Source: Salpingoeca rosetta (Eukaryota; Protista; Choanoflagellata). From it: DNA of 64,000 nt. A program made the translations under genes and the position numbers. The stretch spans positions 803,084-867,083 of the forward strand of contig JAWQFM010000004.1 in the NCBI GenBank assembly GCA_033442325.1, written 5' to 3'. Below the pieces are notes generated by a model, which did not search any database, had not been told where the DNA came from, and saw only the letters and a program-made list of their open reading frames with translations. Shown piece by piece: positions 56,654 through 64,000 of the stretch; within the stretch, counting starts at the first letter, position 1; each line of letters begins with the position of its first letter.

Positions 56654-57848
56654 TTAGTCACGCTTGAAGCGTGTTGGACGCTGTGGCTCTTGTGGCGCTG
56701 CGGCGAGGTGGAGTGCACGCATCACATCGTCGACACTGCAATCACTCAGCACAAACAGGGCACACAAACCTGCCACATGTGTGTGAATTGGAGGTTGGGG
56801 GGGGGTGTTAGAGCAGAAGTGTGAGATGTGAAGTGCGAGATGTGTAGAGTATGTGGTGTGCGGCAGGAAGCGCGTGGGGCGGCATTTGTATATCAAAAGG
56901 AAAAGCGGCAATCAAACGGCGGTGTTTGAGAGGGGCGCAGAACGGCAACTGCACACAAATACTCAGAAGGGCGTGCTACACGCAGTTGGTACCACGATCT
57001 TCATTCACACACACTCTCTCTCACCGCAGATGAAGAGGAGCATAATGTCCGAGATGACCCAGGAGAAGAGGCCGAACAAGAAGGAGCCCAACGCGAGGAT
57101 GATGATCACATACTGTCGACACGGTTAAGCACATGGTGCAGCAAGAGGTGTGGGGGAACGCAAAGAGTGAATGAGAGGAGGGTGGATAGGTGGGTGGGAA
57201 ATGAGCAAGTGCACGCCTACGCTTGCGCGCTCCCACATACGCACACACACGCACACACGATACGAAACGCACGCACACGCGACACGCAACGCACATGCAC
57301 ACACACACACACACCACAATAACCCCTCCGCCCCCCTTCCTCTTCTGTAATTGCCTCACCACAATTGGCCGGGATGTGCGGAGCGCTGCGAGCCGACTGC
57401 AGGCCGTCTCGACGGCCGAGTGGGCAGAGGCAATCTTGCCTGCAAGCTGGTTGATGGCGATGCGCTGGTCGTTGGTAATCTTCTTGTTCTTGCTCTTCAT
57501 GTTGCGCTGGTAGCACAGGATAAAGTGGGCAGGGATGGCCAGCGCCGCGACGCAGAGGAAGAGGAAGGACATCACGGATGCGTTCCAGAAGGGAAGCCAG
57601 ACACAAAACGCCGTCCACCCAAGCAGCGTCGCCAGGAAGCGCTTCGGGTGCCGGCGCGGGTGCATCACGGACTGGAACAGCACACAGATGTGCCGCTGAT
57701 GGAACAAGAACTCGTCCCAGTCCTTGTGTCGCTCGCAACAAAAGGCGCCCGCCGCTGCTGCCGATGCCGACGACGACGACGCCGATGTCGCCGCTTGTGT
57801 CGCATGTTGCCTCTGCTGCTGCTGCTGCTGCTGTAACGACCGCCTCAT
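56654..57848 (-). CDS. ARL6IP1/RETREG-like reticulon-homology ER-shaping protein
   Basis: Exons ~57361-57848, ~57025-57112 and 56654-56769 give ...FLATLLGWTAFCVWLPFWNASVMSFLFLCVAALAIPAHF...ITNDQRIAINQLAGKIASAHSAVETACSRLAALRTSRPIV|YVIIILALGSFLFGLFSWVISDIMLLFIC|GLCALFVL...RFKRD*. Two hydrophobic hairpins flank an amphipathic linker, as in ARL6IP1. Confidence 0.65.
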
Positions 57849-57889
57849 GTCTGTGTGTCGTGTATGTTGTGATGTGTGTATGAATGGAT

Positions 57890-58030
57890 GTATGCGTGTG
57901 TCGGTGGTGTGGTGACCTTTGCTGTGGTCAGGAGCTGGAGCTGGCCGTCTGTATGTGAGGGTATGCGTGGTGGTGTGGTGACCTTTGCTGTGGTCAAGAG
58001 ATGGAGCTGGCCGGCTGTATGTGTTGAGGG
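57890..58030. repeat. tandem ~70-bp duplication upstream of the ARL6IP1-like gene
   Basis: Two copies of GTATGCGTG..GGTGGTGTGGTGACCTTTGCTGTGGTCA.GAG.TGGAGCTGGCCG.CTGTATGTG. Confidence 0.9.
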
Positions 58031-58097
58031 TGTGGTGTTTGGTCCGTTCCTTTCAACCTCGCAATCGTTGTCCACGAAATTTTCGGTGTATGCTTAA

Positions 58098-58109
58098 ACT
58101 GAATTCAGT
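58098..58109. promoter_or_regulatory. single ACTGA-NN-TCAGT palindrome (ACTGAATTCAGT)
   Basis: Same motif as the array at 60592-60736; lies ~250 bp upstream of the ARL6IP1-like ATG. Confidence 0.45.
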
Positions 58110-58476
58110 CTTTCAGAGGGAAGTTGTTTCAGTCAGGCAAGCGAGGCAGGGCAAGCAGGTCAGCATGGCATGGGTGGCAGCAAAGTTAGATGGATGGCCC
58201 CAACAAGCAAGCAAGGGAGCCACCAGTGAACGTCATCAACGGGGGAATTGTGTGTCCGTTCAATGGCATAAAGGAAACCAAAGAAAAGAAGGGAACACGG
58301 CAGTTTGTAGGGATCAACAAACGACAAAAACAAATGGGTCACAAGCAGGATAACAAAATCGTGACATCATGTTGTTGTTGTTGTTGTTGTTGTTGTTGGT
58401 GGTGGTGGGTTGGTATCGGATGGCATCCGTTTCTGCTCTTGTTGGTCGGTCGGTCGGTCGGTTACGGGTGGGTGGT

Positions 58477-60132
58477 TTACTGCTGCTTCTTGTTGTTGGA
58501 AGCAGTGGTGGTGGAGTCGTCGTCGCTGTGCAGCTCGGCAATCTCGTCCTTGACGGCGCTGATGGCCTCCGTGGCCTGCTGCAGGTTCTCCACAAGCTCC
58601 TCTGGCAGCTCAAGCTGGGTGCCGACCTGGAAGCGGCCGGGCCCAATGCACGAGTCGAGGCCGCCAAGCTCACGCGAGCGGCGGTACGCGGCCCAGATGG
58701 CGTCAGAGAAGACGGTGCGCATGCCGCCGCGCTCAAGCTGGTACAGCGCAGCCGCCGTAGTGCCGCCAGGGGAGGTGATGTCGTTCTTCAGCATCGACGG
58801 GTGCTCGCCAGAGGCCAGGGCCAGGTTGACCGCGCCGCGGACCGTGTGCAGCACGAGCTTGCGGGACACGTCGCGCGCAAAGCCCATGTGCACGCCGGCG
58901 TCAATCATGGCCTCGAACATGAGCTGGCACATGGCGGGCCCGCTGCCGGAGAGGGCGGTGGCCATATCCAGCATGCGCTCGTCGGAGAGCAGCACCTCTG
59001 CACCAAAGGCGCTGAGGAGCTCCTTGGCCTGGCGCCGCTGCTCCGGCGACACCTCCTGCGTAAACGTCCAGCTGGTGATGGATTCGTTGATGAGGGCGGG
59101 CGTGTTGGGCATGGCGCGCACGACACGCTTGACGCCGAGGCCCTCGCGGATCTGGCTCAGCGTGAAGCCGGCAGCAATGGACACGACCAGGCAGTCCTTG
59201 GAAATGGTGTCGCGGATGCTGTCAAAGACGAGCGCCATGGTCTGCGGCTTGACGGCGAGGATGAGAATGTCAGCGCCCTTGGCGGCAGAGGCGTTGTTTG
59301 CCGTGGTGAGGATGTGGAAGCGGTCCTTGAGGTAGGTGCGGCGGCCCGCGTTGGGGTCGCACGCCGTCACCTGCGTTGCCTCCACGGCACCGCCGTTGAC
59401 CATGCCGCCCATCATCGCCTCCGCCATCTTGCCGCTGCCCAGGAACACAATCTTCTTGTCCTTGAGCGCGACCGAGGGCTGGCGCTGCTTGACTTGCTCC
59501 TCGCCCTGGCTCTGCTGCTCGTTTTGCGCCTGCTTGCCGTCGTCGGGCACTTCTTCAACCACGGCCTCCGCGTTGGCGCTCTGCAGCGTCTTGCGACTTC
59601 TCCTCAGGGCGCACGCCGTTGTGTGCAGGAAGCGGGCGCTGGGCATGGTCGGGGGCCGGCTCAGCATCTGCGAGGGCGGGAATTTGGCCGCGTGGTAGCG
59701 CATGTCCGGGCGCGGGCGGGCCAGCGGCTGCTGCTTGAGCAGGCCGCGTGCCTTGAGCGACGCGCGTTTCGTCGCACTGCCAGCAGTGTTGCTGCTATTT
59801 CTGGGGGCTGCGGGTGCGGGTTCTGCGCGCATGAAGCGCGTCGACGTGTGCATCTGGCGGGCGGTGCAGGCGGTGGGAGGGCGCGACATGACCTCCGTCG
59901 GCGGGAATTTTGCCGCGTGGTAGCGCAGGTCTGGGCGGCCCGATGTCCTGCCGACGCGCATGGCGGCTGCGGACGACTTGTTCGCCGCAGAGCTGCCGCG
60001 CATGATGGTGGCCGGGGAGATGATCTTGGTGCGCGTGCGCGGTGCGGTCTGCGCGGCCGCGGCCGCAGCCCGGCTGGCTTGGGCACTGACGGACAGCGCT
60101 CTCCTTGTTGTTCGTGTCATGGGAGTGGCCAT
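58477..60132 (-). CDS. PYCR: pyrroline-5-carboxylate reductase with a ~220-aa N-terminal extension (intronless, 551 aa)
   Basis: KIVFLGSGKMAEAM (NADPH-binding), ADILILAVKPQ, VVSIAAG, VVRAMPNTPALI, DMATALSGSGPA and ITSPGGTTAAAL are the P5CR signature motifs. The extension is Arg/Ser/Ala-rich and nearly free of acidic residues, like a mitochondrial presequence. Confidence 0.95.
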   Translation of the reverse strand: MATPMTRTTRRALSVSAQASRAAAAAAQTAPRTRTKIISPATIMRGSSAANKSSAAAMRVGRTSGRPDLRYHAAKFPPTEVMSRPPTACTARQMHTSTRFMRAEPAPAAPRNSSNTAGSATKRASLKARGLLKQQPLARPRPDMRYHAAKFPPSQMLSRPPTMPSARFLHTTACALRRSRKTLQSANAEAVVEEVPDDGKQAQNEQQSQGEEQVKQRQPSVALKDKKIVFLGSGKMAEAMMGGMVNGGAVEATQVTACDPNAGRRTYLKDRFHILTTANNASAAKGADILILAVKPQTMALVFDSIRDTISKDCLVVSIAAGFTLSQIREGLGVKRVVRAMPNTPALINESITSWTFTQEVSPEQRRQAKELLSAFGAEVLLSDERMLDMATALSGSGPAMCQLMFEAMIDAGVHMGFARDVSRKLVLHTVRGAVNLALASGEHPSMLKNDITSPGGTTAAALYQLERGGMRTVFSDAIWAAYRRSRELGGLDSCIGPGRFQVGTQLELPEELVENLQQATEAISAVKDEIAELHSDDDSTTTASNNKKQQ

Positions 60133-60591
60133 CTTGTTGAGTAAGGGTGGGAGGGTATGTGTTGTTGTCGTTGTTGTTGTTGCTGGGGATCTGTTACTTC
60201 TGTTCTGTTCTAGTGAGGAGACTACACTGCAGTAATGTAATGCGACGTGGAAGGAAAGTGGTCACAGACAACTTGTGTGGAGAAGGGAGATTGGTTGACT
60301 TGAGATCGGATTGAGTTGGGAGTTTGAGATGAGAGAGGACAGGGCGAGAGGTGATGGGTGTGTGGCGTGATGATGTGTGGCGCAAAGTCTGATGATGATC
60401 TGAGAGGTAAATGGTGACTTTTCTGGGAAGGAAGCGAGCAAGGTTGATGGTGGTGGTGGTGCTGCTGCTGCTGTGGCCGCATGTCGTCGCTTGAAGCGCA
60501 GGTTGGTTGGTTGGTTGGTGGTGTTGCTCACATCTGCCACTTTCCATCGCATGTCCGTGATCGCAGAAACGAACCCAAACCAAGAACAGCG

Positions 60592-60736
60592 CCTGAAGTC
60601 AGTGGAATCGTCTAAACTGAAATCAGTCGATACAGTGGTTCGTAACCAACTGAGTTCAGTTGTTGACTCATTAAATGGAGATTTTGTTCATTTCAGGGGG
60701 TACTGATGTCAGTCGAATGTTGGAACTGAGATCAGT
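60592..60736. promoter_or_regulatory. array of five 12-bp palindromes ACTGA-NN-TCAGT plus a TGACTCA site, upstream of PYCR
   Basis: CCTGAAGTCAGT 60592-60603, ACTGAAATCAGT 60616-60627, ACTGAGTTCAGT 60649-60660, ACTGATGTCAGT 60702-60713 and ACTGAGATCAGT 60725-60736; TGACTCA at 60664-60670. The repeats are seen directly; a regulatory role is inferred. Confidence 0.7.
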
Positions 60737-61377
60737 TGATGTGCGGGAAGTTTAAGGCGGTTTTGAAGAAAAACGTCATCGGGCACATGGCAAACCCATT
60801 TGAAGAAATTGCCGAATATTAGGAACGTCTTGAAAGAAGAAAATCTATTTCGGGCACGTGCAAAGCCCGGTCAAAACGGCGCACAAACACAAGCATGTAG
60901 AATACAACTTGTGGTGTATGATGGAGTCCGCGACACGCGACACTCAGAAGTATGTGTTTGTTTGCATTGTGTGGGTGTGTGCGGGTGTGCGGGTGTGTGT
61001 GTGTGTGGGTGTGTGGGTGTGTGGGTGTGTTTGCATGCGCGTCTCTGTCTCTCCCTGTCACTCACTCTCTCACTCACACACACACACTCTCTCTCGCTCT
61101 CTCTCCTCTGTCCGTCACAACCACACCACGACCTGCAACAAATTCATTAGATGTACATAATTGTAGAATTGTCGTTGTAACAAACGCGCAGGTGATGCGC
61201 AGGACATAATTAACCAAGCATGGGGTGGTTGAAAACGGAAAGTTGGCGCCACACACACACACTCTCGCACACTCACACACGCACACAAACGGACACAACA
61301 CATGCACACGCACACACTCACACACTCACACACACGCACACACACATATGCCGCATAGGTCAAATCAGTTAATGAAA

Positions 61378-64000
<2,623 letters not shown>

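What the first reader, a model, noticed from the sequence alone, without database searches (positions are those of the whole stretch)
60592..60736. Operator-like array of five ACTGA-NN-TCAGT palindromes upstream of P5C reductase
Seen: four perfect and one single-mismatch copies of a 12-bp inverted repeat lie within 145 bp. The arms are fixed, the 2-nt centre differs in every copy (AG, AA, GT, TG, GA), and the intervening sequence is unrelated. Start-to-start spacings are 24, 33, 53 and 23 bp. With 10 fixed positions, well under one chance hit is expected in 64 kb. Fixed arms with a free centre are typical of a dimeric DNA-binding protein site rather than a tandem duplication. The array is 460-600 bp upstream of the PYCR ATG. 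Known: the core resembles bZIP Maf/CRE-type CTGA-NN-TCAG elements, and proline is a common osmolyte. Inference: this may be a cooperative enhancer of an undescribed stress or osmotic regulon.
Basis: partly seen in the sequence, partly recalled or inferred. Interest (0 to 1): 0.8.

Follow-up and report, generated by a model that had tools for sequence, protein, structure and literature searches.

The report
Palindrome cluster at a choanoflagellate promoter
Five copies of the 12-bp palindrome ACTGA-NN-TCAGT sit where the transcript of a proline-synthesis gene of the choanoflagellate Salpingoeca rosetta begins, and a sixth sits just upstream of the next gene's transcript start, so this looks like a promoter element for an unknown dimeric DNA-binding protein, not a distant stress enhancer.

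Summary
There are four perfect copies and one single-mismatch copy of ACTGA-NN-TCAGT at 60592-60736. I found a sixth perfect copy at 58098-58109. Only 0.09 copies are expected by chance in 64 kb.

The window is Salpingoeca rosetta scaffold GL832960.1. The P5C reductase gene lies on the minus strand, with its ATG at 60132.

Stranded RNA-seq places the 5' edge of its transcript inside, or at the gene-side edge of, the array. No reads cover 60649-61042. The sixth copy lies 13-27 bp upstream of the mapped 5' ends of the next gene, the unrelated reticulon-like PTSG_11900.

The array is therefore promoter-proximal, not a distal enhancer. The fixed 2-bp spacer, invariant arms, free centre and unrelated spacers fit a homodimeric DNA-binding protein best. 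That protein is unidentified.

Nothing supports an osmotic regulon or a Maf factor:
- The 85%-identical P5CR paralogue locus (21 kb, 8 genes) has no copy.
- The flanks are not Maf-like.
- Published work dates the origin of Maf bZIPs to animals.

A transposon origin could not be excluded genome-wide. No other copy, terminal repeat or transposase was found in the 85 kb held.

An earlier, unchecked note of this scan (s1-435471) reports the same palindrome in three promoters on another scaffold.

The parts
60592..60603 (.). Palindrome copy 1, CCTGAAGTCAGT (one mismatch); nearest to the gene and probably inside the transcribed leader
60616..60627 (.). Palindrome copy 2, ACTGAAATCAGT; shares the 16-mer TAAACTGAAWTCAGTC with copy 6
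   Evidence: family D12
60649..60660 (.). Palindrome copy 3, ACTGAGTTCAGT; read depth is zero from 60649 upstream
60702..60713 (.). Palindrome copy 4, ACTGATGTCAGT; in untranscribed DNA
60725..60736 (.). Palindrome copy 5, ACTGAGATCAGT; in untranscribed DNA
58098..58109 (.). Palindrome copy 6, ACTGAATTCAGT; a single site between the 3' end of the P5CR mRNA and the start of PTSG_11900
58477..60132 (-). P5C reductase coding sequence: 551 aa, one exon, with a lineage-specific N-terminal extension
60133..60648 (-). 5' leader of the P5CR mRNA (about 460-520 nt). The upper limit is known only at bin level: reads are present in 60452-60648 and absent in 60649-61042
   Evidence: raw stranded reads X21, X22; contigs of X13 and X17 reach 60279 and 60438
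56654..57848 (-). PTSG_11900, a reticulon-like protein of 230 aa in three exons (introns 57359-57113 and a 255-nt one)
57849..58085 (-). 5' UTR of PTSG_11900. Read ends pile up at 58071, 58073 and 58076; contigs end at 58076 and 58085
   Evidence: tables 6 and 8
60765..60868 (.). Two copies (60765-60797 and 60836-60868, 73% identical) of a 33-nt element with a CACRTG core, upstream of the palindrome array; possibly a second cis-element
   Evidence: family D3

Best explanation
The array is a cluster of five binding sites for one unidentified sequence-specific protein that binds DNA as a symmetric dimer. Each subunit would read one ACTGA arm, and the 2-bp centre is not read. The fuller site, written on the gene's strand, is TCR-ACTGA-NN-TCAGT-T.

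The cluster lies in the AT-richer gap between the 3' end of the upstream gene and the start of the P5C reductase transcript. Three copies are just upstream of the transcribed region. One or two are at or inside its first bases. A single copy of the same site lies 13-27 bp upstream of the mapped 5' ends of the next gene.

The element therefore acts at the promoter. The bound factor most likely helps to open or define the promoter, or fixes where transcription starts. It may activate or repress.

Shown: the sites, their statistics, their position relative to the transcripts, their absence from the paralogue's locus, and the absence of repeat or transposon hallmarks in the DNA held.

Inferred: that a protein binds, that it is a dimer, and the direction of its effect.
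For: - Statistics: five perfect copies in 64 kb against 0.09 expected. All have spacer 2 and partial matches are not enriched.
- Six different centre dinucleotides, unrelated spacers and irregular spacing rule out tandem duplication.
- Stranded RNA-seq: P5CR transcript reads are present in 60452-60648 at gene-body depth and are zero in 60649-61042. PTSG_11900 read ends lie at 58071-58076 and contig ends at 58076 and 58085, next to the copy at 58098-58109.
- The two copies nearest the transcript starts share 15 of 16 bases, flanks included (D12).
- The array lies in the local G+C minimum: 0.41 against 0.58 for the window.
- Published S. rosetta ATAC-seq finds regulation overwhelmingly promoter-proximal (PMC12572184).
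- An unchecked note, s1-435471, reports the same palindrome in three other promoters of this genome.
Against: - No binding protein is known and no binding data were available.
- Only about 91 kb of this genome could be read, roughly 20 promoters of which 2 carry the site. Neither generality nor a target-gene set can be stated.
- The transcript start of P5CR is known only to about 60 bp, and RNA-seq under-reports true 5' ends.
- The five-site gene is 10-40 times less expressed than the one-site gene in both samples. More sites therefore do not simply mean more transcription.
- Copy number of the array in the whole genome was not testable.
Confidence: 0.55

Rival explanations
1. Palindromic initiator. 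Each arm, TCAGT(Y), is an initiator of the Drosophila TCAGTY type, and the palindrome is a back-to-back, direction-neutral start site. Transcription would begin inside the motif, not downstream of a bound factor.
For: Nine of 11 perfect arms are followed by a pyrimidine, giving TCAGTY. Transcribed regions abut a palindrome at both genes, and RNA-seq typically loses the last 10-25 nt of a 5' end (own knowledge). Unchecked notes in this genome mention palindromic initiator-like motifs and this palindrome in bidirectional promoters (s1-432506, s1-435471).
Against: Two independent initiators need no fixed 2-bp spacing or perfectly invariant arms, and initiators are normally degenerate. No plus-strand (divergent) RNA is seen at either place. 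No reads start from the three distal copies. Read-end pile-ups lie 22-27 nt from the motif edge and not in it. About 18 of roughly 20 promoters in the DNA held lack the motif.
Confidence: 0.15
2. Relic or end of a mobile element. The palindromes would be transposase-binding subterminal repeats of a DNA transposon, possibly now used as a promoter.
For: A metagenome scan found a dispersed repeat family in an unrelated, AT-richer organism: at least 9 contigs, 79-96% identical over about 240-440 bp. It is built of irregularly spaced GCACTGA-NN-TCAGTGC copies with variable centres. Such arrays can therefore belong to repeats. The half-site contains CAGT, a common start of Tc1/pogo-type termini (own knowledge).
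Against: There is no second copy of 60500-60950 in the 85 kb of S. rosetta DNA held, and no similarity to the metagenomic family. There are no terminal inverted repeats around the array and no transposase-like ORF. The flanks of the six sites agree for only 2-3 bases. The sixth site stands alone at another promoter.
Confidence: 0.1
3. One reading: a cooperative enhancer bound by a Maf/CRE-type bZIP that drives a stress or osmotic regulon including proline synthesis.
For: The TGA-N2-TCA frame equals that of CRE and the 14-bp Maf element. Proline is a common osmolyte (own knowledge). An AP-1/GCN4 heptamer, TGACTCA, lies between copies 3 and 4.
Against: The position is at the promoter, not distal. 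None of six centres is CG, and none of 12 arms has the Maf GC flank. MAF-NFE2 is reported as metazoan-born. The paralogous P5CR lacks the site. The neighbouring unrelated gene has it. There is no co-variation of the two genes between two RNA samples.
Confidence: 0.07
4. Barrier between tandem genes. The tightly bound factor blocks read-through polymerases from the upstream same-strand gene and shields the downstream promoter, as yeast Reb1 or Rap1 roadblocks do.
For: Both places lie between the 3' end of one minus-strand gene and the start of the next. The single copy at 58098 lies in the very short gap between the P5CR 3' UTR (reads to the 58088-58284 bin) and the next start. Multiple high-affinity sites would suit a block.
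Against: Upstream-gene reads stop about 400 bp before the array, so no read-through is seen reaching it. No pile-up of 3' ends is seen at either site. Depth is too low to judge.
Confidence: 0.08

Closest known systems
Promoter-proximal sites of 'promoter-defining' factors (Drosophila DRE TATCGATA/DREF, vertebrate NRF1 GCGCATGCGC, yeast Reb1/Abf1/Rap1)
   Same: A short, sharply defined, often palindromic motif. It is found in a subset of promoters within about 150 bp of the transcript start, sometimes in several copies, in compact genomes with little distal regulation.
   Different: The sequence is different. No binder is known, and no genome-wide distribution is available yet. Five copies in 145 bp is unusually dense.
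Maf recognition element (14-bp form TGCTGA-CG-TCAGCA)
   Same: The same frame: a CTGA-N2-TCAG core extended outwards by flanking bases, read by a dimer.
   Different: The flank is A, not G (ACTGA versus GCTGA), in all arms. The centre is free instead of CG. The Maf family is reported to have arisen in animals (PMC4736632).
CRE/ATF site TGACGTCA
   Same: An 8-bp TGA-NN-TCA palindrome.
   Different: The CG centre that bZIP basic regions contact is absent in all six sites. Conservation lies outside the 8-mer.
Drosophila-type initiator TCAGTY
   Same: Each arm plus the next base reads TCAGTY in 9 of 11 arms, and the sites abut transcript 5' ends.
   Different: Initiators are single, oriented and degenerate. 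Here two arms are locked at a 2-bp spacing and repeated five times.
Subterminal repeat arrays of DNA transposons (e.g. En/Spm TnpA 12-bp motifs) and the metagenomic GCACTGA-NN-TCAGTGC family found here (L089, L020, L017, L040, L046, L094)
   Same: Irregularly spaced copies of one short motif with unrelated spacers. The metagenomic family even shares the ACTGA-NN-TCAGT core and the free centre.
   Different: The S. rosetta array has no detectable second copy, terminal repeat or transposase in the DNA held. Its flanks differ, with no GC...GC extension.

Membership tests
Homotypic transcription-factor site cluster in a proximal promoter | Three or more copies of one motif within about 200 bp, far above chance | tested here: met
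   Five copies in 145 bp; 0.09 expected per 64 kb
Homotypic transcription-factor site cluster in a proximal promoter | Lies within about 150 bp of the transcript start | tested here: met
   The 5' edge of P5CR reads falls in 60452-60648, with zero depth in 60649-61042. The sixth copy is 13-27 bp from the 5' ends of PTSG_11900
Homotypic transcription-factor site cluster in a proximal promoter | A protein binds the motif | not testable with these tools
   Needs a footprint, pull-down or DAP-seq
Maf recognition element | TGA-N1/2-TCA core | tested here: met
   All six sites have TGA-NN-TCA
Maf recognition element | Flanking GC (TGCTGA...TCAGCA) | tested here: not met
   Arms read ACTGA (11 of 12) or CCTGA (1 of 12), never GCTGA
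Maf recognition element | A Maf-family bZIP exists in the organism | tested here: not met
   From the literature only: MAF-NFE2 is listed as being of metazoan origin (PMC4736632). The S. rosetta proteome was not searched here
CRE/ATF site | Central CG of TGACGTCA | tested here: not met
   Centres are AG, AA, GT, TG, GA and AT
Initiator (TCAGTY type) | Sequence TCAGTY | tested here: met
   Nine of 11 perfect arms
Initiator (TCAGTY type) | Transcription starts at the A of TCA | tested here: inconclusive
   Read ends lie 13-27 nt downstream of the motif edge, but RNA-seq truncates 5' ends. P5CR is known only at bin level
Tandem repeat / satellite | Units alike over their whole length, with a regular period | tested here: not met
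   Spacings are 24, 33, 53 and 23 bp, and the spacers are unrelated. Most metagenome hits, by contrast, are regular repeats
Transposon end / dispersed repeat | Multiple copies in the genome | tested here: inconclusive
   No other copy in 85 kb of S. rosetta DNA. The whole genome is not searchable with these tools
Transposon end / dispersed repeat | Terminal inverted repeats, target duplication, transposase ORF | tested here: not met
   No inverted repeats beyond the palindromes themselves. No Pfam hit on the flanking ORFs
Distal enhancer | Acts from a distance, separate from the core promoter | tested here: not met
   The array overlaps or abuts the transcript start
Structured RNA | Transcribed, with a match to a family or a conserved fold | tested here: not met
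   Zero reads over the three distal copies. No Rfam match in the array. The fold z-score of -3.6 follows trivially from repeated palindromes

The most novel reading that the evidence does not exclude
RACTGA-N2-TCAGTY is a so far undescribed, genome-wide promoter-defining element of choanoflagellates. An unknown dimeric factor binds it and sets the transcript start some 15-30 bp downstream. In tandem gene pairs the factor also shields the promoter from the upstream gene. [quoted passage not shown]
Probability: 0.25. Interest if true: 0.65.

Novelty: new member of a known kind. Interest (0 to 1): 0.42.

Why it matters
Salpingoeca rosetta is the main laboratory model for the ancestry of animal gene regulation. 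In the papers I could search, the only S. rosetta cis-regulatory motif I met that is tied to a factor is the RFX X-box, and the published ATAC-seq study reports no motif analysis.

A sharply defined palindrome at two neighbouring transcript starts, once as a five-copy cluster, is a ready handle. It can be scanned genome-wide, checked against existing ATAC-seq data and used as bait to find its factor. It can also be tested by reporter transfection, which is established in this species.

If it is common, it would add a piece to the promoter grammar of pre-animal genomes. If it is confined to a few genes, it defines a small co-regulated set. Taken alone it is an ordinary kind of feature, a transcription-factor site cluster, not a new mechanism.

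Tried and rejected
- Orthologous-promoter comparison failed. The closest P5CR relatives (P0003, P0005; 81-85% identical) exist only as transcript-like Logan contigs with about 150 nt upstream. More distant choanoflagellate hits are transcriptome entries without contigs.
- More S. rosetta loci could not be obtained. The third protein search (a TPR query, hoping for many paralogues) returned a single S. rosetta protein on a 3.8-kb contig, so that search was wasted. Spliced neighbours cannot be looked up without typing sequences, so walking along the scaffold was not possible.
- PTSG_11900 is on record on the genome contig only, so transcript contigs could not refine its start.
- A metagenome scan for triple arrays gave 94 contigs. 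Nearly all are regular tandem repeats whose unit happens to hold the motif. None resembles the S. rosetta array.
- Rfam gave only sub-threshold hits on microsatellites.
- The RNA fold z-score was rejected as uninformative.
- Literature searches found no description of the motif. The supplement of the ATAC-seq paper is not held.
- An RFX X-box search in the window, as a positive control at the ciliary ODAD1 promoter, found nothing.
- Myb (YAACKG), HSF (GAA-NN-TTC), TALE homeodomain, p53 and EBF consensus sites were considered from memory and rejected on sequence.
- A partial resemblance of 60731-60756 to Tc1-type termini was recalled from memory. It was not pursued: there is no TA flank, no second end and no transposase.

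Full report
**What is there.** The sequence at 60592-60736 holds four perfect copies of ACTGA-NN-TCAGT (60616, 60649, 60702, 60725) and one copy with a single mismatch (60592, CCTGAAGTCAGT). The centres are AG, AA, GT, TG and GA. Start-to-start spacings are 24, 33, 53 and 23 bp. A sixth perfect copy, ACTGAATTCAGT, lies at 58098-58109. Shuffles that preserve dinucleotides give 0.09 copies per 64 kb, and none of 100 shuffles reached 5. The Poisson probability is about 5e-8.

Only a 2-bp spacer occurs; spacers 0-8 and the everted arrangement give nothing comparable. Variants with two mismatches are not enriched: 15 were found against 32 expected. The sites are therefore sharp. Between the copies the DNA is unrelated. 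Beyond the 12 bp, only 2-3 flanking bases agree.

**Where it is.** The window is Salpingoeca rosetta assembly GCA_000188695.1, scaffold GL832960.1 (source names). All genes at this end of the window lie on the minus strand:
- a 3250-aa gene whose coding part ends near 61378;
- the single-exon P5C reductase, 60132 to 58477, 551 aa, with Pfam P5CR_dimer and F420_oxidored;
- PTSG_11900, a 230-aa reticulon-like protein with its ATG at 57848 and three exons (the Pfam Reticulon match is only marginal);
- an ODAD1-like gene.

**Transcripts.** I laid two stranded 2026 RNA-seq runs and two older runs' contigs on 57300-63200. Almost all pairs have the first mate on the plus strand. This fits minus-strand RNAs, as the coding strands require.

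P5CR reads run from its 3' UTR up into the bin 60452-60648. In run X22 the depth there (7.6) is as high as in the gene body (2.5-10). Depth is zero in 60649-60845 and 60846-61042 in both runs. Contigs of two independent older runs reach 60279 and 60438. The mRNA therefore has a leader of about 460-520 nt, and its 5' edge lies inside or at the gene-side edge of the array. Copies 3-5 are in untranscribed DNA just upstream. Copies 1-2 are at or within the first bases of the RNA. This is bin-level resolution, and microsatellites in that bin were skipped by the tool, so I give the start only as about 60590-60650.

For the highly expressed PTSG_11900, read ends pile up at 58071, 58073 and 58076. Contigs from two other studies end at 58076 and 58085. 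That is 13-27 bp from the edge of the copy at 58098-58109. No plus-strand RNA is seen at either place. The reads of the upstream gene stop about 400 bp before the array.

The array also lies in the local G+C minimum, 0.41 against 0.58 for the window. Both occurrences of the palindrome in this window thus abut a transcript start. The two copies nearest the starts agree in 15 of 16 bases, flanks included: TAAACTGAAWTCAGTC (family D12).

**How general is it?** I could read only about 91 kb of this genome. The window plus a 6-kb extension (L001) holds only these six copies. S. rosetta has a second P5CR gene (P0004, 433 aa, 85% identical) on scaffold GL832972.1. Its 21-kb locus, with 8 annotated genes, has no copy even at one mismatch.

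So the motif is not a universal core-promoter element, and it does not go with P5CR as such. Roughly 2 of 20 promoters seen carry it. An earlier first-reader note of this scan (s1-435471) reports '(G)ACTGAATTCA(GTC)' in three bidirectional promoters on another scaffold of this genome. I could not check that note, so it is a lead, not support. If it holds, the element is widespread.

In the two RNA samples PTSG_11900 differs about 3-fold while P5CR does not change. The five-site gene is expressed 10-40 times less than the one-site gene. This gives no sign of simple dose-dependent activation or of co-regulation, though two samples are very few.

**Mechanism.** Ten invariant positions split into two inverted 5-bp arms, a strictly fixed spacer, a centre that differs in all six copies, and no degenerate 'shadow' copies. 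This is the signature of a symmetric dimer in which each subunit reads one arm. The position says promoter, not enhancer.

My best reading (0.55) is a homotypic cluster of sites for an unidentified dimeric factor acting at the promoter. It would define or open the promoter, or fix the start some 15-30 bp downstream. The sign of its effect is unknown. This agrees with the published finding that accessible chromatin in S. rosetta is overwhelmingly at promoters (PMC12572184). That study reports no motif analysis, and I found no paper describing this motif.

**Rivals.**

(a) Palindromic initiator (0.15). Each arm plus the next base reads TCAGTY in 9 of 11 arms. This is the Drosophila initiator consensus (own knowledge). 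RNA-seq cannot exclude starts inside the motif. But independent initiators need neither fixed spacing nor perfect arms. No divergent RNA is seen. The distal copies give no reads, and the read-end pile-ups lie 22-27 nt away.

(b) Transposon relic (0.10). My metagenome scan for triple arrays returned 94 contigs. Nearly all are regular tandem repeats whose unit happens to contain the motif. One family is different. It comprises at least 9 contigs from related samples, 79-96% identical over about 240-440 bp. It consists of irregularly spaced GCACTGA-NN-TCAGTGC copies with variable centres. That is a dispersed repeat in an unrelated, AT-richer organism, and it shows that such arrays can be parts of mobile DNA. 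For S. rosetta I found:
- no second copy of 60500-60950 in the 85 kb searched and no similarity to that family;
- no terminal inverted repeats;
- no transposase-like ORF.
The decisive whole-genome BLAST is not possible with these tools.

Only the TGA-N2-TCA frame is shared. No arm has the Maf GC flank and no centre is CG. MAF-NFE2 bZIPs are listed as a metazoan innovation (PMC4736632).

(d) A roadblock between tandem genes (0.08). This is attractive because both places lie between one gene's 3' end and the next gene's start. However, no read-through or 3'-end pile-up is visible at this depth.

Structured RNA is excluded. The distal copies are not transcribed and there is no Rfam match. The fold z-score of -3.6 is a trivial result of repeated palindromes.

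**Verdict.** This is a real, highly non-random promoter-proximal cluster of a sharp palindromic site, in an organism whose cis-regulatory vocabulary is almost unknown. It is an ordinary kind of thing, a transcription-factor site cluster, with an unknown reader. The specific story of a distal cooperative enhancer of an osmotic regulon with a Maf-like binder is not supported. I score interest at 0.42 and class it as a new member of a known kind. The most novel reading still open is a genome-wide promoter-defining or insulating element of choanoflagellates. I give that about 0.25.

Noticed in passing
window 60664-60670: An AP-1/GCN4-type heptamer, TGACTCA, lies between palindrome copies 3 and 4 in the promoter of an amino-acid biosynthesis gene. 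The window holds six such heptamers counting both orientations, so this one alone is not significant.
   Followed up: partly
window 60765-60797 and 60836-60868: Two copies (73% identical) of a 33-nt element, GAAGAAAA...TCGGGCAC(A/G)TG(G)CAAA(C/G)CCC, with an E-box-like CACRTG core, lie just upstream of the palindrome array. They may be a second cis-element pair.
   Followed up: no
window 57903-57957 and 57969-58023: A 55-nt direct repeat, 95% identical and 66 bp apart, lies inside the 5' UTR of PTSG_11900.
   Followed up: no
window 58477-60132; L002 10001-11302: S. rosetta has two intronless P5CR genes (85% identical) in an intron-rich genome. After choanoflagellate hits, the best matches are bacterial (Chloroflexota/Anaerolineae genomes assembled from metagenomes, 51-54% identity). 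This hints at an old bacterial origin of the gene, but no tree was built.
   Followed up: no
L089 5864-6267; also L020, L017, L040, L046, L094, L032, L041, L022, L059: A dispersed repeat family in metagenome contigs of one sample group (GC 0.41-0.44). It is built of irregularly spaced GCACTGA-NN-TCAGTGC palindromes with variable centres. It is probably the end of a mobile element of an unidentified eukaryote.
   Followed up: partly
window 57300-58087 versus 58482-60648: PTSG_11900 depth is about 3-fold higher in run X22 than in X21, while P5CR and the upstream gene are unchanged. P5CR is expressed 10-40 times less than its one-site neighbour.
   Followed up: no
window 58088-58284: The P5CR 3' UTR runs to within about 100-200 bp, possibly less, of the next gene's transcript start. 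The two tandem genes are almost contiguous, with the single palindrome in the gap.
   Followed up: no
window 60524, 62605-62649, 57300-57465: Odd read joints link these places, some of them between opposite strands. All sit at microsatellite borders, so I take them for mapping or template-switch artefacts.
   Followed up: no
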